IMG/VR virus record: IMGVR_UViG_3300038424_000251
Span: 62,001 to 126,000 of that record
Strand: one strand, 5' to 3'
DNA length: 64,000 nucleotides
In this document: positions 1-64,000 of the stretch, one piece after another
How positions within the stretch are numbered: position 1 is the stretch's first letter
How the letters are laid out: the number at the start of each line of letters is the position of its first letter
Program-made: the position numbers and the translations under genes
The notes under the pieces: model-generated
Told to the model about the DNA's origin: nothing
The model's database searches: none
The model's input: only the letters and a program-made list of their open reading frames with translations

Positions 1-153
1 TTCAACACCATTACAACCGATAAGAAAAGACAGTTGACGTTAAGAGAACTATTTTATATAATGTATGGAAAAGATGCACAATTTATTGATGTTGAGAATG
101 TTATGGAGATTGCTAGAACCATCAATAAACTTTTTTTATTGAGAGAAGTATAA
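1..153 (+). CDS. 3' end of a gene truncated by the window edge (…MYGKDAQFIDVENVMEIARTINKLFLLREV*), possibly a vWA/CobT-like C-terminus
   Basis: Frame 1 is open from base 1 to TAA at 151-153; the product guess is weak. Confidence 0.55.
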   Translation, partial: FNTITTDKKRQLTLRELFYIMYGKDAQFIDVENVMEIARTINKLFLLREV

Positions 154-160
154 ATAGATG

Positions 161-189
161 TTGACAAAACAAAGAATTTATGATATAGT
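161..189 (+). promoter_or_regulatory. sigma70-like promoter TTGACA-17-TATAGT with extended -10 TG
   Basis: Direct motif match upstream of ORF 241. Confidence 0.75.
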
Positions 190-240
190 GATTATAATAT
201 AAGTTCTATATTTAATAGAGCACAACAAGAAGGTATAGTT

Positions 241-642
241 ATGAGTATTAGAAAAACACAACGTAAAAATAAAACAAAGCAAGTTATTTCTTGGCCACCA
301 CACGATTCATATTTTACTATTGATAGTTTGGTAGAAATAAATCCTCATATGCTTACATCATCAGGTTCAGATATCACTCTGAGAGTTCGATTGAACAAAG
401 CAACAGATGAAGAAGGATTGGTAGCAGTAATAGGCCAAAAAAATTGTGGTAAAGGAAGACCGCAAAAAGTTTGGGCTATGCGACCTGTTAAACAATCTGC
501 TATTGACAAAGCAAAAGCTGATGGCATTTCTTTAGATATACCAAAAATTATGACCGTTATGGAAATTTCCACACAAACAGCTACTCCTGCCGTAACACCC
601 GTTACAAATATAGCGTCAACCGCCAAGACAGTAAATGCTTAA
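241..642 (+). CDS. putative winged-helix DNA-binding protein
   Basis: ITLRVRL helix followed by GKGRPQKVW wing-like motif; low-complexity Thr/Ala tail. Confidence 0.5.
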   Translation: MSIRKTQRKNKTKQVISWPPHDSYFTIDSLVEINPHMLTSSGSDITLRVRLNKATDEEGLVAVIGQKNCGKGRPQKVWAMRPVKQSAIDKAKADGISLDIPKIMTVMEISTQTATPAVTPVTNIASTAKTVNA

Positions 643-665
643 TCATATTAAAAAATATCATACAT

Positions 666-860
666 ATGAAAAGAAAAAAGATTGCGAAAAAGAAATCGCA
701 TTTGATTGACTTACATATGTATGGTATTTTTGATGTCAAGAGAAATACAATAATCAAAATTAGCCTTGACCCAACAGAAATACAAATGGAAATAGCCCTT
801 TCAGGTGGGTTAAATGAAAATCTTACAGAATGTGAATTTAACGTTAAACTAGCTATTTAA
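666..860 (+). CDS. hypothetical protein
   Basis: 64 aa ORF in operon position. Confidence 0.55.
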   Translation: MKRKKIAKKKSHLIDLHMYGIFDVKRNTIIKISLDPTEIQMEIALSGGLNENLTECEFNVKLAI

Positions 861-1383: not shown

Positions 1384-2724
1384 ATGAGTGAAGAATCTTT
1401 TTTCAATTTTGAACCACGGTCTGATGATATCAAGAAGAAAATATCAGAAGAAAGAAAAAAGATGAATGAGCCATTGGGGAAATATGCAAACAATGACATC
1501 GTTAAATCTACAACGGGAGAAGATATTTTTAATTTTGAAAAAAATAAGCAGAAACTTATAGATGATTTGAATTGGTTAAAATCTCTCAAAGTTGAAGAAT
1601 TTACATTTCGTAAAAAATTTGAAGAAATTCAATTGGTAAATGATTTTATTAAAAAATATGATACTAGAGCAAAAGCTAGAATATGGGAACCGACAAATAT
1701 CAATGATGAAGAACTTACCATTAAGGAAATCAACATTCTTCAACCGAAAGTAATTGTTGTTGTTGATGAATTTCAAGAACGGCTTTGGACTACTTTGAGA
1801 ATTTATTGCAGCACAGCAGAATATAACCAAGCACCCGGACGATTCATAAAATTCCTAATGATAGATAATATATCAAATCAAGTGTTGGGTATAGCTTCTA
1901 TTGCTAGTGATGTTATTTCTATATCTGCCAGAGATAAATTTATTGGTTGGACATCAGAAGATAAATTACAACACAAAATGTTGAAATATTCTGCTATAGG
2001 AACTACTATTGTTCCTACACAGCCACTTGGAATAAATTTTTTAGGTGGAAAACTTATAGCAGCATTGGTGACTTCTGATGTAGTTAGAAATGAATGGGAA
2101 AATGAAGATTTAGATAAAACAAAATCTAAACCCTGTAAGTTAGTTGGAATGACAACTACCAGCTTATATGGTCGTCCCTCTATGTATGATGCCATGAAAT
2201 GGTGGAAAGGTGTTGGACTTTCAAAGGGTAAAATACCCATTAAACCCTATGAAGATGTTTATAAAGATTGGCATGATTGGTTAAAGCAATATAAAAAAGA
2301 AAAGTATGATGAAGCTATGAAACAGAAAGAAGGCGTATCTGGCCCAGTTACAGGCGCAAAAATGAGAGTATTGTCGATGATATTTGATGCTTGCGACATT
2401 AAGCAATCAGAATATTGCCATGGATATGAAAGAGGTGTTTATTATTCGTGTTTTTATGAAAATACAAAAGAATTTCTCTGTAGAAAAATTACAGAGAATA
2501 AATTAGTTATGAAACCACTATTTAAAGATGGGGTAAAAGCTATTTTGGAATGGTGGCGACCAAAAGCTATACAAAGATATAAAAAATTGAAAGCAGAAGG
2601 AAGATTGAATCCGAACAAACTGTTTTATAATGAAATGGATAGAAATATAGTTTATCCTTCCATGACGGATAAAGAGGCATATAATGAAGTAAAGAAAAAA
2701 TTCTTCATTGATGTAGGCCGATAA
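1384..2724 (+). CDS. DUF4338/DruA-like protein (GNAT/Mom-related fold), long form
   Basis: PGRFIKFL…LGIASIASD…RDKFIGW…IVPTQPLG.NFLGGKLIA…TTSLYG motifs typical of DUF4338. Confidence 0.8.
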   Translation: MSEESFFNFEPRSDDIKKKISEERKKMNEPLGKYANNDIVKSTTGEDIFNFEKNKQKLIDDLNWLKSLKVEEFTFRKKFEEIQLVNDFIKKYDTRAKARIWEPTNINDEELTIKEINILQPKVIVVVDEFQERLWTTLRIYCSTAEYNQAPGRFIKFLMIDNISNQVLGIASIASDVISISARDKFIGWTSEDKLQHKMLKYSAIGTTIVPTQPLGINFLGGKLIAALVTSDVVRNEWENEDLDKTKSKPCKLVGMTTTSLYGRPSMYDAMKWWKGVGLSKGKIPIKPYEDVYKDWHDWLKQYKKEKYDEAMKQKEGVSGPVTGAKMRVLSMIFDACDIKQSEYCHGYERGVYYSCFYENTKEFLCRKITENKLVMKPLFKDGVKAILEWWRPKAIQRYKKLKAEGRLNPNKLFYNEMDRNIVYPSMTDKEAYNEVKKKFFIDVGR

Positions 2725-6916: not shown

Positions 6917-7751
6917 AATAGATTTATTTGGTGGAACAGGTTTTATAGGTTCTCATTTTAAGAAGTTATATGGTGATGATGTGTATGTTCATCCAAGAAA
7001 TTCTGCCAAACCAGTTACAGACAACGTGTTATACATGATAAGTACCACCGACAATTATAATGTATATAGCGACTTGATGGTGGATATTGATACAAATTTG
7101 ACTCACTTATTAAGAGTTTTGGATTATTATAGAGATGATGAATCATTAAGAAAAAATTCTATTTTTAATTTTGTAAGTTCGTGGTTTGTGTATGGAAAAA
7201 TTTATGATTTACCTGCTAAAGAAACGTCTATTTGTAATCCCAAAGGATTTTATTCCATAACTAAAAAATGCGCAGAAGATTTATTAATATCTTTTTGTGA
7301 AACATATGATTTGAAGTACAGAATTTTTAGATTATGTAATGTCTATGGTATAGGTGATAAAGACGTATCGAAAAGAAAAAATGCTTTACAATACTTAATA
7401 AATGAAATAAAAAATAATAGACCTATACAATTATATTATGGTGGGAATTTTATCAGGGATTATATGGATGGAGATGATATTTGTAGAGCTATTAATTTGT
7501 GTATGAACGTTTCTAATGTCAATCAAATCATAAACATAGGAAGCGGAATACCACAAAATTTTGGAGAAATTATACATTCTGTAGTTAAAGAAACCGGTTC
7601 GACCAGTTTAATAACTGCTATAGACCCTTCTGATTTCCACAAGCATGTTCAAGTGAAAGATATGTATTTAGATATTACTAAACTTAAAAATTTGGGATTT
7701 ATACAACAGGTCAAAATATTTGATGGCATTAAAAAGATTTTAAATTCGTAA
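6909..7751 (+). CDS. NAD-dependent epimerase/reductase (nucleotide-sugar SDR)
   Basis: GGTGFIG, YSITK (YxxxK), RLCNVYG, RDY. Confidence 0.85.
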   Translation: MNKIDLFGGTGFIGSHFKKLYGDDVYVHPRNSAKPVTDNVLYMISTTDNYNVYSDLMVDIDTNLTHLLRVLDYYRDDESLRKNSIFNFVSSWFVYGKIYDLPAKETSICNPKGFYSITKKCAEDLLISFCETYDLKYRIFRLCNVYGIGDKDVSKRKNALQYLINEIKNNRPIQLYYGGNFIRDYMDGDDICRAINLCMNVSNVNQIINIGSGIPQNFGEIIHSVVKETGSTSLITAIDPSDFHKHVQVKDMYLDITKLKNLGFIQQVKIFDGIKKILNS

Positions 7752-8496: not shown

Positions 8497-9200
8497 AAAA
8501 TCTCATTGTCCCAATTTATTAGTGGCGCTAACCAAGGCAAATCGCCATGTGTGGAATAACTTGGAATCGGTGTTATCAATGTTCTTCCTTTGTCTCTTAA
8601 TTTCAAGAACATTCTGAAATCTTCGGGATAAGAACCAACTGTCCATTTTCTAAGTATAGGTTCATCTTCTCGTAATGTCTTTAATTTAGCTGCAAATGTC
8701 ATTGTTGTGGAATTGGTAAGTTTCCAATGACAGGATTTGCTTAGAAATACTTTGGTTATTTCACCACCATTTTCAATAAAAGGATTTCCACCTTTATCAC
8801 CATTCAAATATTTGTCAGGATGGTCATATAAGGAAATATAATCTGTACCTATATCAAATCCTTCTTCCATTATTGACTTTGAATTTTTACGGTGGATATA
8901 ATCATTTTCAACAAAATAGATTATTTCATCATCATTTTTTTGTTTTAATGCTAAATCTAACACTCTGTTGAAAGTCTGTGCGCTACTGCCCAAATTTGAT
9001 GAAATAATTGTATCTGCTGAAACTATATCTTGGACCATTTTATAAGTCTCATCGCAAACTCTATCAACTAAAATAAAAAAATTGTTGAGTTTATTATTGA
9101 GGAAATTTCGCTTAAAATTTTCGAGACAATTTTTATTGTTTATAAGGGGATGTTTTATTTTCTTATAACCAGCATCACTTAATCTGTAAAATATTATCAT
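8493..9200 (-). CDS. putative GT-A fold glycosyltransferase
   Basis: IIYFVENDYIH (DxD-like); cluster context. Confidence 0.6.
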   Translation of the reverse strand: MIIFYRLSDAGYKKIKHPLINNKNCLENFKRNFLNNKLNNFFILVDRVCDETYKMVQDIVSADTIISSNLGSSAQTFNRVLDLALKQKNDDEIIYFVENDYIHRKNSKSIMEEGFDIGTDYISLYDHPDKYLNGDKGGNPFIENGGEITKVFLSKSCHWKLTNSTTMTFAAKLKTLREDEPILRKWTVGSYPEDFRMFLKLRDKGRTLITPIPSYSTHGDLPWLAPLINWDNEIL

Positions 9201-27961: not shown

Positions 27962-28873
27962 TTAATCACGTTCTTCTTTTGGAATATCTGAAATTGCGTT
28001 ACAATTTATACCCTTATGGGGACAATAACGGCAATTCTTTTTTCCTTTTCCGGGATTTTTTAAGTAAATTTTGGAATCCTCTATAAAATTACCCTCGGGT
28101 GTAAAACATTCCGCAACAAATTCAGCAAATCTATTCAATGCTTTAGCTACAGATTGTTGATTATTTTTTGGAATGAATGTTTGAATACGACTTTGAGGAA
28201 ATGCATAATTTTCCCAAAGTTTTCTTCTGAGGATGAAAAATTCAACGTCAATCATATTAATATCAACATTATATTTCCTACTGAAAAATGCTTTGTATAA
28301 AAGAATTTGAGAAATTTTAGCTTCATCATCTCTTTGATAATGATTCCATCCACTTGTGGAAGTTTTAATATCAATAATTTTGTATCTACCTGTTGCTTTT
28401 TCTTTTAGAACAACATCAATGTAACAAATAAATTCCACATTGTTTTTAATTGGCATTATAATTTCATCTTCAATGGCAATAAATTCATATTTACCTGACG
28501 GGAAATGTTTAATACGGTTAGTAATATTAGTAAATGCAATAATGATATTATCACCGTCTTCATAATATTCTTTCTTGATTGCCGGTTCGACCACAACTTT
28601 TGTTTTTTCTAATTCTCTATCAAAAGCAATTTTGAATATTTCATAAAGGTTATGTGCATCAGCATCTTTTGCAGATTTTTTATATAAAGTTTTAATGTAT
28701 AATTGAGTAGCTTCGTGCATCGCTGTGCCGAAACAAGTATTTACATTATCTTCAAATTCACGCAATCCTTTTACGTGGTCGAGATACCATCTGTGTCGGC
28801 AATTAAACCAGTTAGAAAATTGAGAGAAACTGACGCGCTTTTTTCCATTGGTTGGTGTAGAATTTCTTTCCAT
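27962..28873 (-). CDS. PD-(D/E)XK exonuclease, Cas4/RecB-like (start reassigned to MERNS)
   Basis: SFSQ…C, FGTAMHE, YIDVV…IIDIKT, QILLY, C-terminal CRYCP….C. Confidence 0.85.
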   Translation of the reverse strand: MERNSTPTNGKKRVSFSQFSNWFNCRHRWYLDHVKGLREFEDNVNTCFGTAMHEATQLYIKTLYKKSAKDADAHNLYEIFKIAFDRELEKTKVVVEPAIKKEYYEDGDNIIIAFTNITNRIKHFPSGKYEFIAIEDEIIMPIKNNVEFICYIDVVLKEKATGRYKIIDIKTSTSGWNHYQRDDEAKISQILLYKAFFSRKYNVDINMIDVEFFILRRKLWENYAFPQSRIQTFIPKNNQQSVAKALNRFAEFVAECFTPEGNFIEDSKIYLKNPGKGKKNCRYCPHKGINCNAISDIPKEERD

Positions 28874-28880
28874 TGATGTT

Positions 28881-28909
28881 ACTTTATCAATATTAGAGAT
28901 ACTTGTCAA
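28881..28909 (-). promoter_or_regulatory. sigma70-like promoter TTGACA-17-TAAAGT, 7 nt before the ATG at 28873
   Basis: The TTG start on the ORF track is the -35 box. Confidence 0.7.
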
Positions 28910-29588: not shown

Positions 29589-32185
29589 TGTATCAAAATA
29601 TATACATCAACAGGAAAGATTGGATTGTTCATCTTTGGGATGATATTAAAGGTTATTCATCATTCCCGTATCCAAAATACGCTTATAAAAGACAAGTAGG
29701 TGGACCTGAAAAGTCAATATATGGTGATGAATTAGTAAAAGTATTTGATTATAAAGACAATGACACAGAGTTATTTGAGTCAGATGTTCCAGCAGAAACA
29801 AGAGTTCTTATGGATACTTACTCCGATTCAGATGAACCATCAATAGGTCATAGGGTGGGTGTAATTGATATTGAAGTATCAACAGAGGGTGGATTTCCAA
29901 ATATAGAAACTGCTGATAAAAAGATTACTGCTATTTCATTGTTTGATTATTTAACTAAAACTTGTTGTATATTTGTTCTTGATAAAGACCATAAAATTGA
30001 CAATAAAGAAGAGGAAGTTGACCCGTGGTTGCCAAAAGATTGGAAAATTACAACAGAAGAAATACAAAAAATAAAAATTGTTGTACGGTCATATGACGAT
30101 GAAGACAATCTTTTAATAGATTTCGTGGATAAATGGCAAGAATGTGCATTTACCATTGTTACAGGTTGGAATGTAGATTATTTTGACCTCCCTTATTTGT
30201 ATCTCCGATTAAAAAATTGTCTTGGTATAAAAGCAGCTAAATGTTTATCGCCCACTGGTGCAGCATATGTAAATGGTTTTACCAAAAAACTAACGCTTGG
30301 TGGTATATCGGTTCTTGATTATATCCTACTATATAAGAAGTTTTCTGGAAAGATGGAACCAACTTATGCTTTAGGTCCTATTGGTTTAAAAACTGTTGGT
30401 ATCGGTAAAATTCAATATCACGGTAATTTAGACGATTTATACAAATCAGATATAAACAAATTTTTAGAATATAACATGACCGATGTTAAAATTATTGTTG
30501 CATTGGATAAAAAACTTAAATTTATTGATTTAGCTAGAAATATTTGTCATGTAGGCCACGTTCCATATGATAATTTTCATATGTCATCACGATATCTTGA
30601 TGGAGCTACATTGATTTATTTGAAACGAAATGGCGGTCTTATTTCTCCAAATAAACCAGCAGAGGGAAAAGAAGAATATACTGAAAGGTTGGAAGAAGGA
30701 GAAGAAGGATTTTCTGGTGCATTTGTCAAGGAGCCCGTGCCGGGAAGATATAATTGGGTTTTTGACCTTGATTTAACTTCAATGTATCCCAATATTATTA
30801 TTTCCCTGAATATATCTCCAGAAACGAAAGTAGGTAAAATAGAAAATTATTCACTCGAAAAGCGTATAAAAGGAGAGACTACAATGTATGAAATTGGTCA
30901 AACAAATTATACACCTGATGAGTTTGAAGAGTTGGTTGAAAAATCAAATTATTCTATTAGTTCTAACGGTATATTATATCGTACAGATAAAGCCGGTGTA
31001 ATTCCTACTCTTTTGTCGTTATGGTTTCAACAGCGCAAGAATATGAGGAAAAAAGCTGCTGAATTCAAAAAAGCTGGTGATATGGAACAATATAATTTCT
31101 ACAACCAACGTCAAGCGGTTTGGAAAATTTTACTCAATTCATTTTACGGAGTATTAGGGTTGCCTTTATTCCGATTTTATGATGTGGATAATGCTGAAGC
31201 AGTAACTACTACAGGTGTAGATATTATTCAAACTACTGCCAAGGCAATTAACATCTATTACAAACAAGCATTGGAAACTGATGAAGATGGTGATTGGGTT
31301 ATTTATAGTGATACCGATTCGTGTTTTGTTGATTCAATTCCCATTATTAAAAAGAGATTTCCAGATATAGATTTGAATAATGAAGATGAAATGACTAAAG
31401 CCATTATGAGCGTGACTACGGAAGTTCAGAGTTATGTGAATCAATTTTATCATGTGATGGCTAAAAAATTCTTCAATTTAAATAAACACACATTTGATGC
31501 TAAGCAGGAAGTAATTAGTAAATCATCGTTTTGGCTTGCTAAGAAACGATATGCGCAATGGATTATTCATGAAGAAGGTGCCTTATTAAAACAACCAAGA
31601 TTGGAAGTAAAAGGTATCGACGTTGTCCGAACATCATTTCCAGCTTCATTTCGGACATTTATGGATTCTTTCTTGAGAAAATTATTGACTGCAGCTCCAA
31701 AAAAGGAACTTGATGATATGATTCTCAAATTCAGAGAAGATATAAAAACACTTGATGTTCTTGATATTGCAAAAAATACTTCTGTAAAATTTGTAAGTCA
31801 GGACGGTGTTCATAACTATAATCCAGATAATAGAAGGCCTCTTCAATTTGTCAAAGGAACGCCGGCACAAGTAAAAGCATGCTTAGCTTACAATGATTTG
31901 TTAATTAAAATGAAGTTAGAAAAACAATTTGAACCAATTCATCATGGTCAGAAAATCAAATGGGTATATTTACAAGATAATCAATATAACTTAGATGCTT
32001 TAGCTTTAAAAGGTGATGGAAATGACCCCGATGAAATATTGGAAATAGTTAATCGGTTAGTTGATAGGAAGAAAATGTTCGAACAGGAATTAAAGAGTAA
32101 ACTAATAGATTTTTACAATGTATTTAAGTGGACATTTCCAAATTCGTCAATGGAAACTGCAAGCCAATTTTTTGATTTTTCTTAA
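29588..32185 (+). CDS. family B DNA polymerase (T4 gp43-like)
   Basis: ExoI DIEV, ExoII GWNVDYFD, ExoIII YNMTD; DLTSMYP, KILLNSFYG, YSDTDS, KKRY. Confidence 0.97.
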   Translation: MYQNIYINRKDWIVHLWDDIKGYSSFPYPKYAYKRQVGGPEKSIYGDELVKVFDYKDNDTELFESDVPAETRVLMDTYSDSDEPSIGHRVGVIDIEVSTEGGFPNIETADKKITAISLFDYLTKTCCIFVLDKDHKIDNKEEEVDPWLPKDWKITTEEIQKIKIVVRSYDDEDNLLIDFVDKWQECAFTIVTGWNVDYFDLPYLYLRLKNCLGIKAAKCLSPTGAAYVNGFTKKLTLGGISVLDYILLYKKFSGKMEPTYALGPIGLKTVGIGKIQYHGNLDDLYKSDINKFLEYNMTDVKIIVALDKKLKFIDLARNICHVGHVPYDNFHMSSRYLDGATLIYLKRNGGLISPNKPAEGKEEYTERLEEGEEGFSGAFVKEPVPGRYNWVFDLDLTSMYPNIIISLNISPETKVGKIENYSLEKRIKGETTMYEIGQTNYTPDEFEELVEKSNYSISSNGILYRTDKAGVIPTLLSLWFQQRKNMRKKAAEFKKAGDMEQYNFYNQRQAVWKILLNSFYGVLGLPLFRFYDVDNAEAVTTTGVDIIQTTAKAINIYYKQALETDEDGDWVIYSDTDSCFVDSIPIIKKRFPDIDLNNEDEMTKAIMSVTTEVQSYVNQFYHVMAKKFFNLNKHTFDAKQEVISKSSFWLAKKRYAQWIIHEEGALLKQPRLEVKGIDVVRTSFPASFRTFMDSFLRKLLTAAPKKELDDMILKFREDIKTLDVLDIAKNTSVKFVSQDGVHNYNPDNRRPLQFVKGTPAQVKACLAYNDLLIKMKLEKQFEPIHHGQKIKWVYLQDNQYNLDALALKGDGNDPDEILEIVNRLVDRKKMFEQELKSKLIDFYNVFKWTFPNSSMETASQFFDFS

Positions 32186-32289: not shown

Positions 32290-33012
32290 ATGAATTATCC
32301 AACTGAAAAAGAACTCAAAGACTTACTAGAATCAGACCTAGAACTTAATGCTATTGCTCAATCAGGCCCTTCTCTTGAAAAGGGACATCATGTTGCTCCA
32401 GAGGTTGAAAGAATTGTCCGTGAAAAATTGTATAATGCTTATGGGGGCAAATATGAAGAATTTATTGACATATATAAAATAGGTCCCAATAAAGGCCAAC
32501 CAAAACCTAAGAAGCAAGGAAAGGGAGTTAGAAAGGAACCAGATTACAAACTAAAAGATTTTCCTGACCAACCGGGTAATGTAAAAGCAGCATGTGTGTC
32601 TGAAAAAGATGGTGGACCTAATCTTTCATCTCTCTCTAAATACGCTACCCAATATATCGATGGTCAAATAAAAGCTTATTGGTTTCTTATTGTCAATTTA
32701 ATAGATGGTAAAGTTTCTGTCAACTTTCATGAATTGTTTAGTGAACTTCTTCCAGTTTGCCGATTTGATTTTGGTCATGGACAATTAATGCTTGATAAAA
32801 GTAGATATTACAAATGGTTAAAAGAACCAAATCATACAAAACTTTCGCCAACAGAATCTATTGATTATTTATTGGAACTTATATCCAAACCAAAAAGAGA
32901 AAAATTTTACGAAAAAAGAGAAAAGAAATATTCCAAACTTGAAGAGAATTTACTTAAGAAAAAATTGGCGTTGAAACCTTCTTATGAGAACACGGAAGCA
33001 CCAAAGGAATAA
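32290..33012 (+). CDS. putative type II restriction endonuclease
   Basis: EPDY…GNVK PD-(D/E)XK-like pattern; overlaps the MTase gene. Confidence 0.55.
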   Translation: MNYPTEKELKDLLESDLELNAIAQSGPSLEKGHHVAPEVERIVREKLYNAYGGKYEEFIDIYKIGPNKGQPKPKKQGKGVRKEPDYKLKDFPDQPGNVKAACVSEKDGGPNLSSLSKYATQYIDGQIKAYWFLIVNLIDGKVSVNFHELFSELLPVCRFDFGHGQLMLDKSRYYKWLKEPNHTKLSPTESIDYLLELISKPKREKFYEKREKKYSKLEENLLKKKLALKPSYENTEAPKE

Positions 33013-34594
33013 TAAACGTCAAATGGGTCAATTTATGACCCCCAGATTATTGGCACAGAAAGTAATAGGAAATGACATTAAGAAAGAAGAGAATATTTTA
33101 GAGCCATCTTTCGGTGATGGCTCTTTTATTATAGAGATAGCAAAAAAATTGATGCCCATATATGACTATAATCTGGATAATGTATTTGACCACATATACG
33201 GCATAGAATTAGACCCAATTCTTTATAACAAGTGTTTACTGAATATAAAAAAAGAATTTGGTAAAATACCTGAAAAACACCATCTTATTAATGAGGATTT
33301 TTTACTGCATAATTTTGATGGAATATTTTTCAAACATATTTTGGGAAATCCACCGTTTGGGGGAACTATACCAATTAAATATCAAAATAAATTAGAAGAA
33401 TTATATGGTAAAAGATATGGAAAAACTATAAAAAGAGAAAGTTATTCATATTTTTTAGTAAAAAGTGTAGGAATGTTGGAAGTAGAAGGAAAATTATCAT
33501 TTATATGTAGTGATACTTTTCTTACAATAAAAACCATGTGCGGATTACGGAATTTTTTAATGCAAGAAGGACTTGTGTCAATCAAAGAATTGCCTGAATT
33601 TTCAGAGGAAACCAATTATGGCATGGTAATTATTGATTTCATAAAATCAAATAAAAAAGAATCTAACTATATTGAAGTCTTTGGACAAAAAATCTTCAAA
33701 AAGGATATGGAAAAAATAGGGAATTTGTCTTGGGGAAATGTTAATGAATACATGAAATATTTTATAGGCCCTCATTTATCAACTTATATTATTTGTAGTA
33801 GTGGGATGACTATAGGAAAAAATGAATATTTTGTCAGAGAAATAGTTGATGATAAAATAATAGAGCCATACAACTTTACATTTTATAATAAACCGATTAC
33901 ATTAAAAGATGAATTGAATAGAGCACATTTTAATAAGTTATCAGAATCACAAAAAGTAAAAATCACACACAAAGAACAAATGGGAGAAACAAAAAAAGAT
34001 GTCAAAATTGAACCTTTAACAGTACCTGAATCAATAATGATTCCAAATGATTACTATAAATATTATAATAAAATGGTCCCCGGTGATGTATATGTAGAAC
34101 CAAAATATGTAATTTATTGGAGAAATGATGGTGAAGCGGTTAAAATGTTTAAAAAAAATGGAAATTGGTATCTTCATGGTATAGGGGGATTGCCCTTCTT
34201 TGGAAGAGAAGGAATTACATGGAATCTAATAGGTTCTAAAATCAACCCAAGATATTTGCCAAAAGGTTATATTTTGGATAGTGGGTGCCCATGTGGATTT
34301 CTGAAAAATGGTGTTGAAAAAGACGAATTATTCTTTATTATGGGGTGGCTTTTAACTTCCATGGCAAATGATATTCTCAAAAATGTTATAAATCATACCA
34401 GAAATATTCAGGGAAAAGATGTTGAAAAACTTCCATATCCTATATGGGTTTCAGATTCTACAAAACATAAAATAATAGATTATGTTAAGTCGATTATTGA
34501 TTTAAAGAAAAATGGAACTCCGTTGGAAAATAGTTATGTTGAAGTTCTAACAGAGTTATTTGATTTTCAGATTGAAAAAAGTGGTGTTGACTAA
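32984..34594 (+). CDS. amino (N6-adenine-type) DNA methyltransferase, gamma class (TaqI/Eco57I-like)
   Basis: GQFMTP, LEPSFGDGSF, YGIELD, GNPPF, C-terminal TRD. Confidence 0.9.
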   Translation: MRTRKHQRNNKRQMGQFMTPRLLAQKVIGNDIKKEENILEPSFGDGSFIIEIAKKLMPIYDYNLDNVFDHIYGIELDPILYNKCLLNIKKEFGKIPEKHHLINEDFLLHNFDGIFFKHILGNPPFGGTIPIKYQNKLEELYGKRYGKTIKRESYSYFLVKSVGMLEVEGKLSFICSDTFLTIKTMCGLRNFLMQEGLVSIKELPEFSEETNYGMVIIDFIKSNKKESNYIEVFGQKIFKKDMEKIGNLSWGNVNEYMKYFIGPHLSTYIICSSGMTIGKNEYFVREIVDDKIIEPYNFTFYNKPITLKDELNRAHFNKLSESQKVKITHKEQMGETKKDVKIEPLTVPESIMIPNDYYKYYNKMVPGDVYVEPKYVIYWRNDGEAVKMFKKNGNWYLHGIGGLPFFGREGITWNLIGSKINPRYLPKGYILDSGCPCGFLKNGVEKDELFFIMGWLLTSMANDILKNVINHTRNIQGKDVEKLPYPIWVSDSTKHKIIDYVKSIIDLKKNGTPLENSYVEVLTELFDFQIEKSGVD

Positions 34595-55878: not shown

Positions 55879-56867
55879 AATATAAAAAATTACTTTCTAC
55901 AATAGTTTGTTTTCTATGTTGCCTTTTCTTTGGAGAAATTTCTTTACAAGCAACACAAAATGTGACTCTTGCGTGGAATCCAAGTACTGACTCAACTGTT
56001 GCGGGATATAAAATTTATTACGGGTCAGCTAGTGGTAATTACACTAATGTAGTTGATGTTGGTAATGTAACAAATGCTACTATTAGTGGATTAGTTGAAG
56101 GTGTCACTTATTATTTTGCAGCTACCTGCTATAATAGTTCTGGTATTCAAAGTCCATTTTCAAATGAAGTCTCTTATACCGTACCAAATTTGTGTCCTAC
56201 AATAAATTCTGTAAGTAATATTTTTATTAATGAGAATGCTGGTCAACAAGTAGTTAATCTGTCCGGTATTACTGGAGGATTTGGTACATATTCAACTATT
56301 ACTATCACTGCATCTTCAGGTAATACCAATTTAATACCTAATATTACAGTAATTTATACAAGTCCAAATACAAATGGGACTTTGGTTTTTACACCGCTAA
56401 CATATGCTTATGGTGTAATTACTAATACAGTGACCGTTAAGACTGATAAAACTAATACTAATTATAATACTACTGCAACAAGTTTTATAATTACAATAAG
56501 TGCTGTTAACCAATGGCCAACATTGACTCTTCCAATTACTAATTTAACTATCAATGAGAACAACGGGTCAACAAATGTAAGCTTTTCCAATGTTACTTCT
56601 GGTGCTCCGAATGAAAGTCAAATACTTACTGTTACTAATTCATCCAGTAATACTAATTTAATTCCAAATCCAATTGTTAATTATACTAACCCATTCACAA
56701 TAGGATCCTTGACTCTTACACCAAAAACTAATATCAGTGGTTTATCTACTATTTTTGTGACTGTAAATGATGGTGGTATTACTAATAATGCTACAACAAA
56801 TAAATTTACAACAACAGTTTTACCATTGCCACCACCAAACTTTCATATTATTAGCGCAACTCAATAA
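55875..56867 (+). CDS. secreted fibronectin type III plus Ig/cadherin-like repeat protein
   Basis: Signal peptide; VTLAWNPS….AGYKIYYG…GL.EG.TYYFAAT.Y; two Thr/Asn-rich INEN…SSGNTNLIPN repeats. Confidence 0.85.
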   Translation: MKYKKLLSTIVCFLCCLFFGEISLQATQNVTLAWNPSTDSTVAGYKIYYGSASGNYTNVVDVGNVTNATISGLVEGVTYYFAATCYNSSGIQSPFSNEVSYTVPNLCPTINSVSNIFINENAGQQVVNLSGITGGFGTYSTITITASSGNTNLIPNITVIYTSPNTNGTLVFTPLTYAYGVITNTVTVKTDKTNTNYNTTATSFIITISAVNQWPTLTLPITNLTINENNGSTNVSFSNVTSGAPNESQILTVTNSSSNTNLIPNPIVNYTNPFTIGSLTLTPKTNISGLSTIFVTVNDGGITNNATTNKFTTTVLPLPPPNFHIISATQ

Positions 56868-56872
56868 TTTTA

Positions 56873-56901
56873 TTGACATCATTGTTAGATTATAGTATCC
56901 T
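56873..56901 (+). promoter_or_regulatory. sigma70-like promoter TTGACA-17-TATCCT, 6 nt before the ATG at 56908
   Basis: Motif match. Confidence 0.65.
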
Positions 56902-56907
56902 TATAAT

Positions 56908-57618
56908 ATGAAAAGTGGACTTACATATATTATATTTGTCATTGACCGTTCAGGTTCAATGCACATAATTTGCAACGACATGATTGGTGGATTTAATTCA
57001 TTCATCAAGACACAACAGGAAGCTAAACTCGGTGATTGCCGTGTTTTTGCTTATAAATTTGATACCGAATATGAAACAATGTTCGAAAATATTGACTTGA
57101 ATCAAGTTCCTCTTTTGGATAGAAATAATTATATTCCAAGAGGCAATACTGCTCTCTATGATTCCCTTGGCAAAACCATTAACGATATTGGAGTTCGTTT
57201 AACTGCTATGCCCGAAGAGGAAAGACCTGAAAAAGTTTTAATAGTCACTATCACTGACGGTGAAGATAATGACCATTTGGAAAAACCCGAAGATGCTATT
57301 AAATACGATTCCGATAGTGTAAAGGAAATGGTTGAACATCAAAGAAATAAATACAATTGGGATTTTGCTTATATTGGTGCTAATCAGGATTCTTGGGCGG
57401 TAGGGTCAAGCATGGGATACATGAAAGGTACTACGCTTAACTATGTAGCAGATTCGGAAGGGACTGCTGTAGCTTTTGATACTTTAGATAGAAGTGTTAC
57501 AAGCTATCGTGCTGCTGCTAAGGGTACAAGATTTAGTTTTTCACCCAAAGATGCAGACACACAGCTTAAAACGTCTGTAAAAACTTCCAAGAAGACTACT
57601 GCAAACAAAACAATTTAA
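56908..57618 (+). CDS. vWA domain protein
   Basis: MIDAS DRSGSM, TALYD, ITDGEDN, YIGANQD. Confidence 0.9.
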   Translation: MKSGLTYIIFVIDRSGSMHIICNDMIGGFNSFIKTQQEAKLGDCRVFAYKFDTEYETMFENIDLNQVPLLDRNNYIPRGNTALYDSLGKTINDIGVRLTAMPEEERPEKVLIVTITDGEDNDHLEKPEDAIKYDSDSVKEMVEHQRNKYNWDFAYIGANQDSWAVGSSMGYMKGTTLNYVADSEGTAVAFDTLDRSVTSYRAAAKGTRFSFSPKDADTQLKTSVKTSKKTTANKTI

Positions 57619-60612: not shown

Positions 60613-60630
60613 ATTTTTTACTTTTTGTTA

Positions 60631-62883
60631 CTACATAAAATCTGTTAAGTCTAATCGTTGTTTCCCATCCCACATATAACCAACTTTTTTCCAACCTGAA
60701 TGGTTGGGGTCTAAAGCATCTGCGCAAATTATATTATGATTTAAGATATCCCATATTTCTTTATCAGATTTTCCTAGTGATAACCGGTGTTTACATTCCT
60801 CAATATTTGTTTCATTTATATCAACTCCATATATTGTTTGAAGAGCATCTAAATGAGTTATTCCATTTAACATTTTTCTTTGAAGAACTTCAAGAAGAAA
60901 ATTTCCATTACCACATGAGATATCGCTATCTATTTTAGAATCTATTACATTCGACGTATCCATTATTTTTCTAACAAACGATATGGGTGTAAATACTTCC
61001 CCATTTTTCTTTATATTTTCTATAGTGTGATATTTGTGACCATTTTCATTACTTTCTTGATTATTACATAATCTTTTATCCATCGTGGAAAAATAATTGT
61101 CTATAAATTTTTCTTCTTCATTGGTTAATTGAAAATCTTTTGATATTCGTGGAAGATTTTTCCAAGTGTACATTGAAATCTGATAATTAGAATAAAGACA
61201 TATTTTTAACAAAAATTGAATGATTTTAGAATTTAAAATATCAATCAGTGTTTTGGCTTCATTTTCGTCTTTAACTACTATATAAGGAAAATGACTTGTA
61301 GTTCCTATATTTTCTGCGTAAAATGGTTCAATGGATAAACTATCGGAAACTATTACTTTTTTCTTATCAAAATCTTTAGATTTTTTCTGTAAAAATATTC
61401 TTTTCTTATTAGTAAATATGTGTTCAAATTTATATTTATTATCCTTTACATTTATGTGGTCTTTATAACCAAGGTTATCTCTTTTAAATTCTAATTTATC
61501 ATATTTTTCTAATCTGCTTAATAACGATTTAACACACTCATTATAAACATTAGGAAGAAATTTTATATTATTAGATATTAAACAATTGGCTATAGTCCCA
61601 TCTTCTGATTTTATAATCGTTGGTGTTTTTAATTTAGTCTTTTGACAAATATACCAGTCAATTTTTGTACCTACAGAAGACCCATTAGGATATTTAAATT
61701 TTTTTCTATATTCTGAATTTAACTCTAGATAAATAAAATTATAATTTTTTAAATATAACTCTAAAATTTTATTTGGTTTTTCCCTCCAATTCATAGGATG
61801 AATCATGTATAAAACTCCATTATCTTCTAAATATTTATCTGCTTGAATAATAAATTCTTTCCACAATTCATTTCCTTTACCACCCGTATTGTCTTCTTTA
61901 AATTTTTGATAGGGTGGATTGCTGTAAATTCTTGTAGCTTTCAATTTTTTTCTCCATTTTGAAAAATCTTTAATAACTATCATTTTCCCATTACATATTT
62001 CATTATTAAATTTTTCAGCTAATTTCCGTTTTCTATAATTTTTGGAAATAAAACCTATAGTATTATTAGTAAAATCATATCCATATAAATAAAACCACTC
62101 TAAAAGCTCAAAAGTATCACTTATAATAAGTGTTTCATTTTGCGGTAATCCTCTATATTTTAAATCGGTTTCTATTATTTGTTTGCATAAGTCTGATGGT
62201 GTATGAACATTTTGAATAGATGTTTCTTTTCCATTATTGACTCCATTTACCATTTCATAACTACTAATATACAACTCTCTTTTAGAATGTAAAGAAAATT
62301 TATTAGTGTTTTTATCGTACTTTAAACTTTTTATATAGTCATCATCATTGTCACACTCAAAATATGGAGAATTACAATTTTCATTGTTCATCAAAAACAA
62401 ATTTTTGTTTATAGCTTCTTCTATAGTTTCTAACATTAAGTTACTATGAATATTTAAAATAATGATGTAATCTCTTATCTTTTTGTCTTTTAATAAATCA
62501 TTCATCAATAATTTGTCTTTATAAGCAGACGAAGATGAAATACTCCAATTATACGGACCGTTTAAATAATTTAATACTACAATTGATGGTAATAAAAAGC
62601 AATAAAACTTTGTTCCTCCGAAAAGCATTGTAGGTAATTTTTTATATTTATCTTGATACTCCTTTTTTAAATAATGAATTTGTTGAGCAATAATTTTGTG
62701 ATAATTTCTTTCAAGATATTTATATTCACACATTATCTCATTGTTTTTATATTCAAAATTATTATCTTTTTTGCCTTTAGCGTGAATACAAATTTTTAAT
62801 TTTTTTTCAAAAGCAATTGCATAGGCAAATTTAACTTCATCTTCATTAGAGGCAATTTTAAGTTTTTTATAAAAATTTAGCAT
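60631..62883 (-). CDS. fused restriction-modification-like protein (nuclease-like N-terminus, NPPY MTase region, TRD, C-terminal SAM-binding module)
   Basis: NEDEVK…D…CEYK…AQ..HY; SNPPYQ; GEVFTP, DISCGNGNFL, IYGVDI, NIICADAL. Confidence 0.75.
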   Translation of the reverse strand: MLNFYKKLKIASNEDEVKFAYAIAFEKKLKICIHAKGKKDNNFEYKNNEIMCEYKYLERNYHKIIAQQIHYLKKEYQDKYKKLPTMLFGGTKFYCFLLPSIVVLNYLNGPYNWSISSSSAYKDKLLMNDLLKDKKIRDYIIILNIHSNLMLETIEEAINKNLFLMNNENCNSPYFECDNDDDYIKSLKYDKNTNKFSLHSKRELYISSYEMVNGVNNGKETSIQNVHTPSDLCKQIIETDLKYRGLPQNETLIISDTFELLEWFYLYGYDFTNNTIGFISKNYRKRKLAEKFNNEICNGKMIVIKDFSKWRKKLKATRIYSNPPYQKFKEDNTGGKGNELWKEFIIQADKYLEDNGVLYMIHPMNWREKPNKILELYLKNYNFIYLELNSEYRKKFKYPNGSSVGTKIDWYICQKTKLKTPTIIKSEDGTIANCLISNNIKFLPNVYNECVKSLLSRLEKYDKLEFKRDNLGYKDHINVKDNKYKFEHIFTNKKRIFLQKKSKDFDKKKVIVSDSLSIEPFYAENIGTTSHFPYIVVKDENEAKTLIDILNSKIIQFLLKICLYSNYQISMYTWKNLPRISKDFQLTNEEEKFIDNYFSTMDKRLCNNQESNENGHKYHTIENIKKNGEVFTPISFVRKIMDTSNVIDSKIDSDISCGNGNFLLEVLQRKMLNGITHLDALQTIYGVDINETNIEECKHRLSLGKSDKEIWDILNHNIICADALDPNHSGWKKVGYMWDGKQRLDLTDFM

Positions 62884-62910
62884 TGCTTTTGATTTTTGTT
62901 TGACTTACTT

Positions 62911-63381
62911 TTACTTAATTATCACTTTGTCAACTTCATCTTTTGTTGGACGTTCGTATTTATTTAAAAATTTATCAATAATTTCTGGCCCAACATGGCG
63001 TTCACGTTTAGCATCTCTTCTCAAAAGTTCATCTCTTGGAACTTCAAATGTAACAGCTATAATGAATGCTCCGTGACTTTTTCCTAAGTTAATCCAATCT
63101 CTTCTAGCTTTTCTACTGACACTAGTAGCATCAATCATTACACTTTTATCTGCACTCAATGCTGATGAAACTCTTTGTCTGGCTATTCCGAAGGCTGCAG
63201 CTGAAACAGTCTGGTCATCTTCTCCTGAGCCAATCTCACTCCTTATTTTGTCGGTAGAAACATAAACAATACCATTATCTAAAGCAAATTTTTTCCCCCA
63301 AGTTGATTTACCACTTGCAGGTGGTCCAACAAGAATAATCAAAGCTTTTTCTTCATCATCAATGTCAATTAATTTATTCAC
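62911..63381 (-). CDS. AAA_33 / polynucleotide kinase-like P-loop kinase
   Basis: GPPASGKST, STDKIR, IDAT, R..KR. Confidence 0.85.
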   Translation of the reverse strand: MNKLIDIDDEEKALIILVGPPASGKSTWGKKFALDNGIVYVSTDKIRSEIGSGEDDQTVSAAAFGIARQRVSSALSADKSVMIDATSVSRKARRDWINLGKSHGAFIIAVTFEVPRDELLRRDAKRERHVGPEIIDKFLNKYERPTKDEVDKVIIK

Positions 63382-63736
63382 AAATTTCTTCTTTATCTCT
63401 GTAAGTGGATAAAATCATATTTATATTAGCTCTACCTACGGGGTTAAACGAATGAACTCTCCATTCTGGTAATGGCTTACCTAATTTCATACAATGTTCA
63501 ATCAACCATTTAGCACAATCATATCCCGTTTTTTCTTTATAGTTTTCATAATCGACAGGCTGATTATAATGTTCTTCATCTAAATCATGGTCAAATGATA
63601 TTAAGTCAGGCAAACCTTTTTCAATAATTGTTTCTATAAATTGTTCATAATTGCGAACTACATACCATTCACCTAATTCAGCGTTAAGAAATGAAACAGG
63701 TTCGCGGTTGTCATCAAGGAATAAATTATAGCTCAT
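63374..63736 (-). CDS. cyclic-phosphate processing receiver-domain protein
   Basis: LFLDDNR, VRNY, ISFDHDL, TGYDCAKWL, HSFNPVGR. Confidence 0.85.
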   Translation of the reverse strand: MSYNLFLDDNREPVSFLNAELGEWYVVRNYEQFIETIIEKGLPDLISFDHDLDEEHYNQPVDYENYKEKTGYDCAKWLIEHCMKLGKPLPEWRVHSFNPVGRANINMILSTYRDKEEICE

Positions 63737-63971
63737 TGCCTTCTATTATATCTATAAAGCCAGCATTTGTCAATTCTTTTAATGCTTCTTCATGCGTTCC
63801 ACCATATTCATAAAGCACCGTCAAAGGAACGTTAAGAAATGATCGTGGTATTAAATTATCAAAATCATAATCATCTTGACCCATGAATTCATACCAATAA
63901 ATGAGTTTTCCATTATAAAACTTTTTTCTAGAATGGAAAATTACCGTAATATCTGATGCTTTCTTGTCCAT
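63726..63971 (-). CDS. hypothetical protein
   Basis: 81 aa ORF with AAGGA SD. Confidence 0.6.
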   Translation of the reverse strand: MDKKASDITVIFHSRKKFYNGKLIYWYEFMGQDDYDFDNLIPRSFLNVPLTVLYEYGGTHEEALKELTNAGFIDIIEGNEL

Positions 63972-64000
63972 ATTATCCTTCTCATAATTAGGTGCGTCAT

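What the first reader, a model, noticed from the sequence alone, without database searches (positions are those of the whole stretch)
1..64000. Strong avoidance of CCWGG: Pro-Gly is consistently coded CCS-GGN
Seen: in this AT-rich genome Pro is usually CCA/CCT, yet every Pro-Gly I checked uses CCC or CCG (for example near 1834, 10248, 13785, 15564, 18023, 26820, 27423, 30739, 32572, 36057, 42833, 53150, 59364). I found no CCAGG or CCTGG by eye, while CCSGG and CCGG are common. Inference: long-term selection against an EcoRII/Dcm-type (CCWGG) system of the host, or against the target of one of the phage's own nucleases.
Basis: seen in the sequence. Interest (0 to 1): 0.65.

Follow-up and report, generated by a model that had tools for sequence, protein, structure and literature searches.

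The report
Phage genome purged of CCWGG sites
This 365-kb uncultivated phage from peat has removed almost every CCWGG (and most GATC) from its DNA by swapping synonymous codons, which is the classic way for a phage to escape its host's restriction enzymes, so it is a clear example of a known strategy rather than a new mechanism.

Summary
CCWGG occurs 0 times in the window, against 30-44 expected. It occurs once in the whole 365,299-bp phage genome, against 186-224 expected. All 27 Pro-Gly pairs in the window, and 170 of 171 in the genome, use CCC or CCG, although about 80% of other Pro codons are CCA or CCT. The other two reading frames, the non-coding DNA and the 54 tRNA/tmRNA genes are equally clean. 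The depletion therefore acts on the DNA, not on translation.

GATC is also depleted 14-fold. Of the 30 most avoided 6-mers, 22 are palindromes. Relatives of the same clade (DNA polymerase 66-100% identical) and one basal sister contig (G001) also have 0-1 sites. Most other relatives (46-58%) keep CCWGG and code Pro-Gly with CCA/CCT. The trait is thus specific to certain lineages, which points to the hosts.

Best explanation: long-term selection by a CCWGG-specific host restriction system, as part of avoidance of several restriction sites. The host is unknown.

The "own nuclease" idea is not supported. ORF 60631-62883 looks like a methyltransferase. ORF 32290-33012 does have a HincII/SwaI-like restriction endonuclease fold, but it sits in a cassette found only in this strain, and relatives without it avoid CCWGG equally.

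The parts
1..64000 (.). Whole window: no CCWGG on either strand. It is part of a 365,299-bp phage genome with a single site, which lies outside the window at G000 44450.
   Evidence: 0 observed against 30-44 expected in the window, and 1 against 186-224 expected in the genome.
30740..30745 (+). Example of the codon solution. The invariant Pro385-Gly386 of the family-B DNA polymerase (gene 29588-32185) is coded CCG-GGA. Every member of the avoiding clade, G001 and Mel-JY01 use CCC or CCG here. Of the 42 other relatives, 17 use CCT or CCA.
1834..1838 (+). In-frame CCC-GGN Pro-Gly. It is one of the 27 Pro-Gly pairs in the window, all coded CCS. Others checked lie at 10248, 13785, 15564, 18023, 26820, 27423, 32572, 36057, 53151 and 59364.
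   Evidence: 27 of the 32 CCSGG in the window lie in the Pro-Gly frame.
32290..33012 (+). A 240-aa protein with a type II restriction endonuclease fold (HincII/SwaI/EcoRV branch). It is part of a strain-specific cassette and is not the cause of the CCWGG avoidance.
   Evidence: Pfam, PHROGs and PADLOC gave no hit. Atlas neighbours carry RE_NgoBV, SwaI-like or ThaI domains. The profile of alignment A7 hits HincII in the PDB at E = 0.0016. An AlphaFold2 model with pLDDT 84.5 matches R.SwaI at 5e-5 and HincII at 2.5e-4, probability 1.0. The gene is found only in L005-L007 and L014.
32984..34594 (+). Eco57I-like (gamma-class) N6-adenine DNA methyltransferase. Its start overlaps the end of the endonuclease gene, so it is the likely partner in a phage-borne type II restriction-modification cassette.
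   Evidence: Pfam Eco57I 1.3e-11 and N6_Mtase 2.5e-10. PADLOC MTase_II and PglX-like. Same strain-restricted distribution as the endonuclease gene.
60631..62883 (-). A 750-aa protein with methyltransferase-like domains. No nuclease domain was found.
   Evidence: Pfam N6_Mtase 9e-7 (residues 622-717) and MTS 4.5e-4 (residues 300-366). PHROG DNA methyltransferase 1.7e-8.
27962..28909 (-). PD-(D/E)XK (Cas4/RecB-like) exonuclease. It is conserved in avoiding and non-avoiding relatives alike, so it does not determine the avoidance.
   Evidence: PF12705 3.7e-18. PHROG exonuclease 1.3e-23. tblastn hits in 65 related loci.

Best explanation
The phage lineage has been under long and strong selection to lose every CCWGG from its double-stranded DNA. 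The most likely reason is that its bacterial host, still unidentified, carries a restriction system that cuts unmodified CCWGG, in the way EcoRII, MvaI or BstNI do.

Sites were removed wherever they arose. Synonymous changes were used: CCW-GGN became CCS-GGN, NCC was avoided before TGG and AGG, and CAG/CTG gave way to CAA or other Leu codons between a codon ending in C and one starting with G. Ordinary substitutions did the same in non-coding DNA and RNA genes.

CCWGG is one item in a wider programme of restriction-site avoidance: GATC, GTATAC/GTMKAC, CCCGGG, GACGTC, GGTCTC, CCATGG and GTAC are also depleted. The phage combines this with five DNA methyltransferases and three Mom-like DNA-modification genes.

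Shown: the depletion, its independence of reading frame, the synonymous-codon route, its uniformity along the genome and its distribution among relatives. Inferred: that a host restriction enzyme of this specificity is the selective agent.
For: 1. Size of the effect. One site against 224 expected by the Markov model (z = -18), or 186 +/- 8.5 expected when proteins and each gene's codon usage are kept. The control GGWCC is normal, at 210 against 224. CCSGG is doubled, at 197 against 93, as expected from the codon swap.
2. A DNA-level target. All three frames, non-coding DNA (0 against about 15) and 54 tRNA/tmRNA genes (0 CCWGG, 9 CCSGG) are clean. The Pro-Gly dipeptide itself is no more depleted than Gly-Pro (171 and 196 against 274 expected).
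3. Not mutational decay. The 5mC-deamination products CTWGG/CCWAG are not enriched (O/E 0.76-0.93). The enriched neighbours are ACAGG, CCAGC and CCSGG.
4. Signature of type II restriction pressure. GATC has O/E 0.07. Of the 30 most avoided 6-mers, 22 are palindromes (P = 2e-31). Avoidance is uniform along the genome.
5. Lineage-specific, so probably host-driven. The 11-row clade around the window (polymerase >= 66% identical) has 0 CCWGG in every locus, and G002 has 0/56 and G003 1/25 (observed/expected). G001 has 0/42 while keeping normal GATC. The 37-row sister clade and other relatives keep CCWGG at roughly 0.2-1.2 of expectation and code Pro-Gly with CCW in 75-83% of cases.
6. The genome has no C5-methyltransferase with which to protect such sites itself and no tyrosine integrase, which fits a virulent phage. 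Site avoidance is known to be strongest for orthodox type II sites in non-temperate dsDNA phages (PMC6286503; PMC12707154 section 63).
7. The one surviving site is a CCA-GGC Pro-Gly in the gp32-like gene. It is present in contigs of four runs. From my own knowledge, plus the title of Kruger et al. 1988 as listed: EcoRII needs two sites to cut, so a lone site would be refractory to such an enzyme.
Against: The host is unknown. The only hit in cellular genomes was a 2.6-kb contig in a Terrimicrobiaceae metagenome-assembled genome, with a 44%-identical polymerase. No CCWGG-specific enzyme could therefore be shown in any host.

The avoidance holds across a clade whose polymerases differ by up to a third and whose G+C ranges from 31 to 41%. 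That requires the selective agent to be unusually persistent across hosts, whereas restriction systems usually vary between strains.

Sequence alone cannot separate avoidance of cutting from avoidance of methylation.
Confidence: 0.68

Rival explanations
1. The phage avoids being marked rather than being cut. The host would methylate CCWGG (a Dcm-like orphan enzyme, or the methylase of a DISARM class 2-like system) and GATC (Dam-like). The phage would lose these sites because methylated sites are attacked by methylation-dependent nucleases in the next host, or because they interfere with phage functions.
For: The two most extreme motifs, CCWGG and GATC, are the targets of the widespread Dcm and Dam methyltransferases (own knowledge). 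Class 2 DISARM marks CCWGG with 5mC (bioRxiv 10.1101/2021.12.28.474362). The avoidance persists over a deep clade, which fits a conserved housekeeping methylase better than a strain-variable restriction system.
Against: Many other avoided words (GTATAC, CCCGGG, GACGTC, GGTCTC, CCATGG, GTAC) are ordinary type II targets. The two traits also separate among relatives. G001 avoids CCWGG but not GATC. L062 avoids GATC only in part. A 25-row clade avoids GATC but only partly CCWGG. They are therefore not one Dam-plus-Dcm package.
Confidence: 0.15
2. CCWGG is the target of a nuclease encoded by the phage itself, for instance to shred host DNA. The phage would be immune because it has no sites.
For: The genome holds many proteins of unknown function. 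One of them (32290-33012) proved to be an unannotated type II restriction endonuclease fold, so unrecognised nucleases do exist here.
Against: That endonuclease comes with a methyltransferase, which implies that its sites are present in the phage genome. The cassette is also absent from relatives with 66-88% identical polymerase that avoid CCWGG equally. The conserved PD-(D/E)XK exonuclease is also present in non-avoiders. No EcoRII-C, MvaI/BcnI or Vsr domain was found. For the first two searches no control genome gave a hit, so those negatives are weak. Close relatives in the same phage family keep CCWGG.
Confidence: 0.06
3. Mutational decay. Dcm-type methylation followed by 5-methylcytosine deamination erodes CCWGG without any selection.
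For: 5mC deamination at Dcm sites is a known mutational hotspot (own knowledge).
Against: The expected products CTWGG/CCWAG are not enriched (O/E 0.76 and 0.93). The replacements are synonymous. Decay would turn Pro-Gly into Leu-Gly, yet 170 Pro-Gly pairs survive as CCS-GGN. A near-total loss (1 of about 200) in all frames needs selection.
Confidence: 0.02
4. Artefact or translational effect. Either base-calling or assembly errors at methylated Dam/Dcm motifs removed the sites, or a codon-pair preference of the translation machinery did.
For: Nanopore base-callers are known to err at Dam and Dcm motifs (own knowledge), and these are the two motifs most depleted here.
Against: Reading frames are intact and the replacements are synonymous. 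The same sequence is assembled in contigs of at least 20 runs from different studies. Diverged relatives show the same pattern. Non-coding DNA and RNA genes are also clean. Related phages with the same codon usage code Pro-Gly with CCW.
Confidence: 0.01

Closest known systems
Restriction-site avoidance in virulent dsDNA phages (surveyed by Rusinov et al. [quoted passage not shown]
   Same: Near-complete elimination of short palindromic type II sites, found in a phage without an integrase, achieved without changing proteins, and affecting several sites at once.
   Different: The host and its enzymes are unknown here, so the site-to-enzyme link that defines the published cases is missing. The genome is very large (365 kb), so about 200 sites had to be kept out. 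The trait is shared by a whole uncultivated clade from peat and wetland samples.
Coliphages T7/T3 and EcoRII/Dam (scarce CCWGG and GATC sites; EcoRII refractory to isolated sites). Own knowledge; Kruger et al. 1988 is listed as reference 290 in PMC12707154.
   Same: The same two motifs are counter-selected together. One lone CCWGG remains in the genome, which a two-site enzyme of the EcoRII type would not cut.
   Different: This is a different phage family (distant T4-like replication genes; the nearest cultured relative is Microcystis phage Mel-JY01 at 44-46% polymerase identity). The environment is peat. Among relatives the two avoidances occur independently of each other.
Microcystis phage Mel-JY01 (PP395634.1)
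   Same: It is the nearest cultured relative. In 150 kb it has 1 CCWGG, 0 GATC, and 241 of 242 Pro-Gly pairs coded CCS.
   Different: Its list of avoided sites differs (GGWCC 0, CTAG 0, GAATTC 0, TTATAA 4). This fits a different host restriction repertoire. It is half the size.
HincII / SwaI / EcoRV-like type II restriction endonucleases (for ORF 32290-33012 only)
   Same: The predicted fold matches R.SwaI and HincII (Foldseek probability 1.0, E 5e-5 to 1e-3). The sequence profile hits HincII. A DNA methyltransferase gene lies adjacent.
   Different: Sequence identity is only 14-16% and no Pfam family matches. The putative catalytic triad reads D...N-x-K rather than D...D-x-K. The specificity is unknown. 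It sits in a phage genome as a strain-specific insertion.

Membership tests
Restriction-site avoidance (anti-restriction by site elimination) | Significant under-representation of a short palindromic recognition site against compositional expectation | tested here: met
   CCWGG O/E = 0.004 in the genome (z = -18) and 0/34-44 (observed/expected) in the window. The protein-preserving null expects 186 +/- 8.5 against 1 observed.
Restriction-site avoidance (anti-restriction by site elimination) | The depletion acts on duplex DNA: it is independent of reading frame and strand, and is also seen outside coding sequence | tested here: met
   All three frames, non-coding DNA (0 against about 15) and RNA genes are clean. 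Related non-avoiders use CCW for Pro-Gly.
Restriction-site avoidance (anti-restriction by site elimination) | The host encodes a restriction enzyme of that specificity | not testable with these tools
   The host was not identified. The record comes from peat and wetland metagenomes.
Restriction-site avoidance (anti-restriction by site elimination) | Virulent dsDNA phage with unmodified target bases | tested here: inconclusive
   There is no tyrosine integrase, no C5-methyltransferase, no PurZ, and ThyX plus dCMP deaminase are present. However, three Mom-like genes and five methyltransferases are present, and the real modification state is unknown.
EcoRII/Dcm-type CCWGG specificity of the selective agent | The avoided word is CCWGG itself, not CCNGG, CCSGG or GGWCC | tested here: met
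   CCSGG O/E is 1.25 (2.1 against the synonymous null) and GGWCC is 0.89-0.94.
EcoRII/Dcm-type CCWGG specificity of the selective agent | Enzyme family of the agent (EcoRII two-site type, MvaI/BstNI type, or a methylation-linked system) | not testable with these tools
   Only circumstantial: exactly one site survives in 365 kb and it is seen in four runs.
Self-immunity to a phage-encoded CCWGG nuclease | A nuclease gene whose presence coincides with the avoiding lineages | tested here: not met
   Cassette 32290-34594 occurs only in the 100%-identical contigs. The PD-(D/E)XK exonuclease also occurs in non-avoiders. No EcoRII-C, MvaI_BcnI or Vsr domain was found. About half of the genes have unknown function and were not excluded.
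Type II restriction-modification system (ORF 32290-33012 plus 32984-34594) | An endonuclease with a PD-(D/E)XK restriction-enzyme fold next to a DNA methyltransferase | tested here: met
   Foldseek: R.SwaI 5e-5, HincII 2.5e-4, then EcoRV, NlaIV and ThaI. Profile against the PDB: HincII 0.0016. The neighbour is an Eco57I-like N6A methyltransferase and the genes overlap.
Type II restriction-modification system (ORF 32290-33012 plus 32984-34594) | Conserved catalytic residues and sequence-specific cleavage | tested here: inconclusive
   D85, N97 and K99 are nearly invariant (at least 90%) across the 22 aligned sequences, but the middle acidic residue is Asn. Activity and target are not testable here.
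5mC-deamination decay of Dcm sites | Excess of CTWGG/CCWAG products and non-synonymous Pro-to-Leu changes | tested here: not met
   O/E is 0.76 and 0.93. Pro-Gly is kept as CCS-GGN.

The most novel reading that the evidence does not exclude
CCWGG avoidance stays absolute across a deep clade (polymerase identity down to 66%, G+C 31-41%) and in G001, while the other avoided motifs come and go. This could mean that the agent is not an ordinary strain-variable restriction enzyme. It could instead be a conserved, lineage-wide host system keyed to CCWGG: a housekeeping Dcm-like mark read by a methylation-dependent or DISARM-like defence. It could also be a still unrecognised phage-encoded CCWGG nuclease. 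In either case the motif signature (CCWGG plus GATC plus GTATAC plus CCCGGG) would serve as a fingerprint for matching this uncultivated jumbo phage clade to its host's methylome in peat metagenomes.
Probability: 0.15. Interest if true: 0.55.

Novelty: new member of a known kind. Interest (0 to 1): 0.3.

Why it matters
Restriction-site avoidance is textbook biology, so the mechanism is not new. The case is still useful for three reasons.

1. It is very clean. About 200 expected sites are reduced to one in a 365-kb genome. Protein-preserving controls and non-avoiding sister lineages show that the cause is selection on the DNA, not on translation or through mutation.

2. The list of avoided motifs (CCWGG, GATC, GTATAC/GTMKAC, CCCGGG, GACGTC, GGTCTC, CCATGG, GTAC) is a testable prediction of the restriction-modification repertoire of an unknown peat bacterium. 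It can be matched against methylomes of metagenome-assembled genomes to assign a host to an uncultivated jumbo phage clade.

3. It shows how one phage layers its defences. These are site loss, five methyltransferases, three Mom-like modification genes and a restriction-modification cassette carried by the phage itself.

Tried and rejected
Host identification
- A megablast of a window segment against cultured phages found nothing.
This is too weak and too distant to name a host.
- The phage tmRNA is the standard one-piece type (RF00023), which is uninformative.
- An Atlas look-up of the phage DapB-like gene gave mixed phyla.
- The literature held nothing on Mel-JY01 and nothing that links cyanobacteria to CCWGG systems.

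Searches in the phage's own genome
- C5-methyltransferase, EcoRII-C, MvaI_BcnI, Vsr, PurZ and tyrosine integrase were all negative.
- For EcoRII-C and MvaI_BcnI no control genome gave a hit either, so these two negatives are weak.

ORF 32290-33012
- It has no Pfam, PHROG or PADLOC hit, even at E = 10.
- The word-based protein search found only itself.
- A single-sequence AlphaFold2 model was unusable, with pLDDT 40.
- Only the exhaustive profile-free search supplied homologues for a usable model.

Other points
The records were fetched and counted locally instead.
- The Pfam batch scans list only the top 25 families per batch. ORFs under 120 aa, the last 46 kb of the genome and gene 36248-38608 were not scanned, so the annotation is incomplete.
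- Rejected readings: 5mC-deamination decay, codon-pair or translational bias, sequencing artefact, and recently acquired islands that have not yet lost their sites (avoidance is uniform along the genome).

Full report
**What the window is.** The window is bases 62,001-126,000 of a single 365,299-bp virus record. The record is rated 100% complete by CheckV, has 33.3% G+C (31% in the window), and carries 54 tRNA genes and a tmRNA gene. The same DNA is assembled in contigs of at least 20 peat and wetland metagenome runs. Replication and structural genes are distantly T4-like: family-B polymerase, gp32, clamp loader, sheath and baseplate. The nearest cultured relative is Microcystis phage Mel-JY01, with 44-46% polymerase identity. 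No tyrosine integrase was found. The host is unknown.

**Check of the observation.** CCAGG and CCTGG are both absent from the window. Four null models give these expectations for the window:
- 43.5 +/- 5.6 from dinucleotide-preserving shuffles;
- 34 from a maximal-order Markov model and 44 from orders 1-2;
- 30.0 +/- 3.7 (minimum 19 in 200 trials) when synonymous codons are permuted within each gene, which keeps every protein and each gene's codon usage.

In the whole genome there is one site, against 224 (Markov, z = -18) or 186 +/- 8.5 (synonymous permutation). The control words behave as they should. GGWCC is normal (210 against 224). CCSGG is doubled (197 against 93), as the codon swap predicts.

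All 27 Pro-Gly pairs in the window, and 170 of 171 in the genome, use CCC/CCG, whereas about 80% of other Pro codons are CCA/CCT (Fisher P = 5e-113). Position 42833 is not.

- The other two frames are equally clean. No NCC codon precedes TGG or AGG. Between a codon ending in C and one starting with G, Gln is CAA 84 times and CAG 0 times, and Leu is never CTG.
- Non-coding DNA has 0 sites against about 15 expected. The 54 tRNA/tmRNA genes have none, although they hold nine CCSGG.
- The Pro-Gly dipeptide is no rarer than Gly-Pro, so proteins were not changed.
- The avoidance is uniform along the 365 kb.

The target is therefore the duplex DNA word, not a codon pair.

**Selection, not mutation.** Dcm-type methylation followed by deamination would produce CTWGG/CCWAG. 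Those words are not enriched (O/E 0.76 and 0.93). The enriched neighbours are ACAGG, CCAGC and CCSGG, which are the outcomes of synonymous third-position changes.

**Context: many sites are avoided.**
- GATC is depleted 14-fold (72 against about 1005 in the genome; 10 in the window).
- GTATAC has 2 sites against 51, and GTMKAC 11 against 110.
- CCCGGG has 0 against 26, and GACGTC 0 against 14.
- GGTCTC has 3 against 21, and CCATGG 11 against 44.
- GTAC has O/E 0.40.
- Of the 30 most avoided 6-mers, 22 are palindromes (P = 2e-31).

This is the known signature of type II restriction pressure on virulent dsDNA phages (PMC6286503; PMC12707154).

**Relatives.** Two scans of viral contigs gave 83 loci (82 rows in the polymerase tree) with polymerase 46-100% identical. 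Their CCWGG and GATC counts fall on the tree as follows:
- The well-supported 11-row clade around the window (polymerase at least 66% identical, G+C 31-41%) has no CCWGG in any locus. Its larger fragments give G002 0/56 and G003 1/25 (observed/expected).
- G001, basal in the sister clade, also has none (0/42 in 96 kb) but keeps normal GATC (261 against 301).
- The remaining 37 rows of that sister clade have normal GATC and keep CCWGG at roughly 0.2-1.2 of expectation. The five rows L100-L104 also keep CCWGG, and their GATC is partly depleted.
- A 25-row clade avoids GATC strongly and CCWGG only in part.
- Mel-JY01 has 1 CCWGG and 0 GATC in 150 kb, but otherwise a different list (GGWCC, CTAG and GAATTC all 0).

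Codon counts give the same picture. Pro-Gly is CCW:CCS = 0:48, 1:33, 0:31 and 0:36 in avoiders, against 85:28, 33:7 and 68:20 in non-avoiders that have the same overall Pro codon usage. At the invariant Pro385-Gly386 of the polymerase (window 30740), all avoiders have CCS, while 17 of 42 other relatives have CCT/CCA. The trait thus varies between lineages of one phage family and is uncoupled from GATC avoidance. That is what a host-imposed pressure predicts, and what a property of the shared phage machinery does not.

**The phage's own enzymes.** The genome has no C5-methyltransferase and no EcoRII-C, MvaI/BcnI or Vsr domain. The first two of those nuclease negatives lack a positive control. 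It does encode five DNA methyltransferases:
- an Eco57I-like one at window 32984-34594;
- a 750-aa protein with methyltransferase-like domains at 60631-62883;
- a weak D12-class one and two N6_N4-class ones outside the window.

It also has three Mom-family modification genes, two of them in the window at 35865-36662 and 24532-25077.

ORF 60631-62883 is methyltransferase-like, with no nuclease domain. ORF 32290-33012 has no family hit, but three independent lines make it a type II restriction endonuclease of the HincII/SwaI/EcoRV branch:
- its language-model neighbours carry RE_NgoBV, SwaI-like or ThaI domains;
- a profile of 22 aligned sequences (this ORF plus 21 remote homologues), with conserved D85, N97-x-K99, GQPN and GPGQxML, hits HincII in the PDB at E = 0.0016;
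- an AlphaFold2 model (pLDDT 84.5) matches R.SwaI and HincII at probability 1.0.

Together with the overlapping methyltransferase gene it forms a phage-borne restriction-modification cassette. The cassette occurs only in the contigs that are 100% identical to the window. It is missing between the polymerase and Mom genes of relatives whose polymerase is 66-88% identical, and these lack CCWGG just as completely. It therefore cannot explain the avoidance. Having its own methylase also implies that its target is present in the phage genome. The conserved PD-(D/E)XK exonuclease (27962-28909) is found in avoiders and non-avoiders alike.

**The one surviving site.** It lies at genome position 44450, outside the window. 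It is a CCA-GGC Pro-Gly in the gp32-like gene and is present without variation in contigs of four runs (contigs hide rare variants). From my own knowledge, plus the title of Kruger et al. 1988 as listed, EcoRII needs two sites to cut, so a single site would be refractory. This is suggestive only.

**Verdict.** The best explanation is long-term counter-selection by a CCWGG-specific host restriction activity, as part of avoidance of several restriction sites (confidence about 0.68). A methylation-avoidance or DISARM-like variant is the main rival (about 0.15; class 2 DISARM marks CCWGG). An own-nuclease reading is unlikely (about 0.06). Mutational, translational and artefact readings are contradicted by the data. 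This is a clean new example of a known strategy, not a new kind of system. Its practical value is the motif fingerprint it provides for finding the host.

**Limits.** The host was not identified. The modification state of the phage DNA is unknown. The gene calls are my own ORF-based calls (507 genes covering 91% of the genome). The Pfam batch scans were truncated and left small ORFs and the last 46 kb unscanned.

Noticed in passing
window 1-64000 (GATC at 13097, 14345, 21157, 23353, 44867, 50264, 52879, 54114, 56704, 63841): GATC is depleted about 14-fold: 10 in the window against about 183-200 expected, and 72 in the genome against about 1005. In absolute terms this is a stronger signal than CCWGG. 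Most relatives share it, but G001 and the sister clade do not.
   Followed up: yes
whole genome G000 (window included): Further near-absent words: GTATAC 2/51, GTMKAC 11/110, CCCGGG 0/26, GACGTC 0/14, GGTCTC 3/21, CCATGG 11/44 (observed/expected), and GTAC at O/E 0.40. Of the 30 most avoided 6-mers, 22 are palindromes.
   Followed up: yes
window 32290-34594 (+): An unannotated type II restriction-modification cassette carried by the phage. It consists of a 240-aa endonuclease with a HincII/SwaI-like fold and an Eco57I-like N6A methyltransferase. It is inserted downstream of the DNA polymerase gene in this strain only. Its target is unknown.
   Followed up: yes
window 35865-36662 (+), 24532-25077 (-); G000 56456-57127 (+): Three Mom-family (phage Mu Mom-like) DNA-modification genes. 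The copy next to the polymerase is conserved (77-100%) throughout the CCWGG-avoiding clade. It was not found in the 20-kb polymerase regions of the sister clade. This suggests adenine hypermodification on top of site avoidance.
   Followed up: partly
window about 7729-24466 (-): A long minus-strand operon of sugar-nucleotide and glycosylation genes. Pfam finds GDP-mannose 4,6-dehydratase x2, epimerase, DegT aminotransferase, family 1/2/7 glycosyltransferases, an FkbM methyltransferase and radical SAM enzymes (for example 14966-16705 and 22169-23671). Its purpose is unknown; it could glycosylate the virion or DNA, or remodel the host surface. Most families were not mapped to individual ORFs.
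   Followed up: partly
window 60631-62883 (-): A 750-aa protein with two methyltransferase-like regions (MTS at 300-366, N6_Mtase at 622-717) and no PADLOC hit. Its specificity and partner are unknown.
   Followed up: partly
window 50237-51892 (+) and 63374-63736 (-): An SNF2-type helicase that resembles DpdE/BrxH/DrmD defence helicases, and a cREC_REC (cyclic-phosphate processing receiver) domain protein. These are defence- or counter-defence-like genes in a phage.
   Followed up: no
G000 outside the window (about 128.8-130 kb and 235-295 kb): There are 54 tRNA genes, including one with anticodon CTA (it reads TAG; ARAGORN calls it Pyl), plus a one-piece tmRNA. Only 27 of the 507 called genes end in TAG.
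   Followed up: partly
G000 outside the window (batches A3, A4, A6): Three DruA-like (Druantia) proteins. NAD-related genes: NAPRTase, NAD synthase, PRPP synthetase, several NUDIX proteins, a PARP-like protein and two ADP-ribosylglycohydrolases. Also a MazZ-like dATP/dGTP diphosphohydrolase N-domain without PurZ, and ThyX, DapB and PhoH.
   Followed up: no
G002:C1:68626-72398 (locus L017): In this 80% relative the DNA polymerase gene is split by about 1 kb that contains stop codons. This looks like an intron or another mobile insertion.
   Followed up: no
G003 (L029-L033) and Mel-JY01 (L018, L034-L038): The 4-mer CCAG/CTGG is itself 3-4-fold depleted (93 against 378, and 118 against 373). This goes beyond what loss of CCWGG explains and hints at a further, unidentified target containing CCAG.
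   Followed up: no
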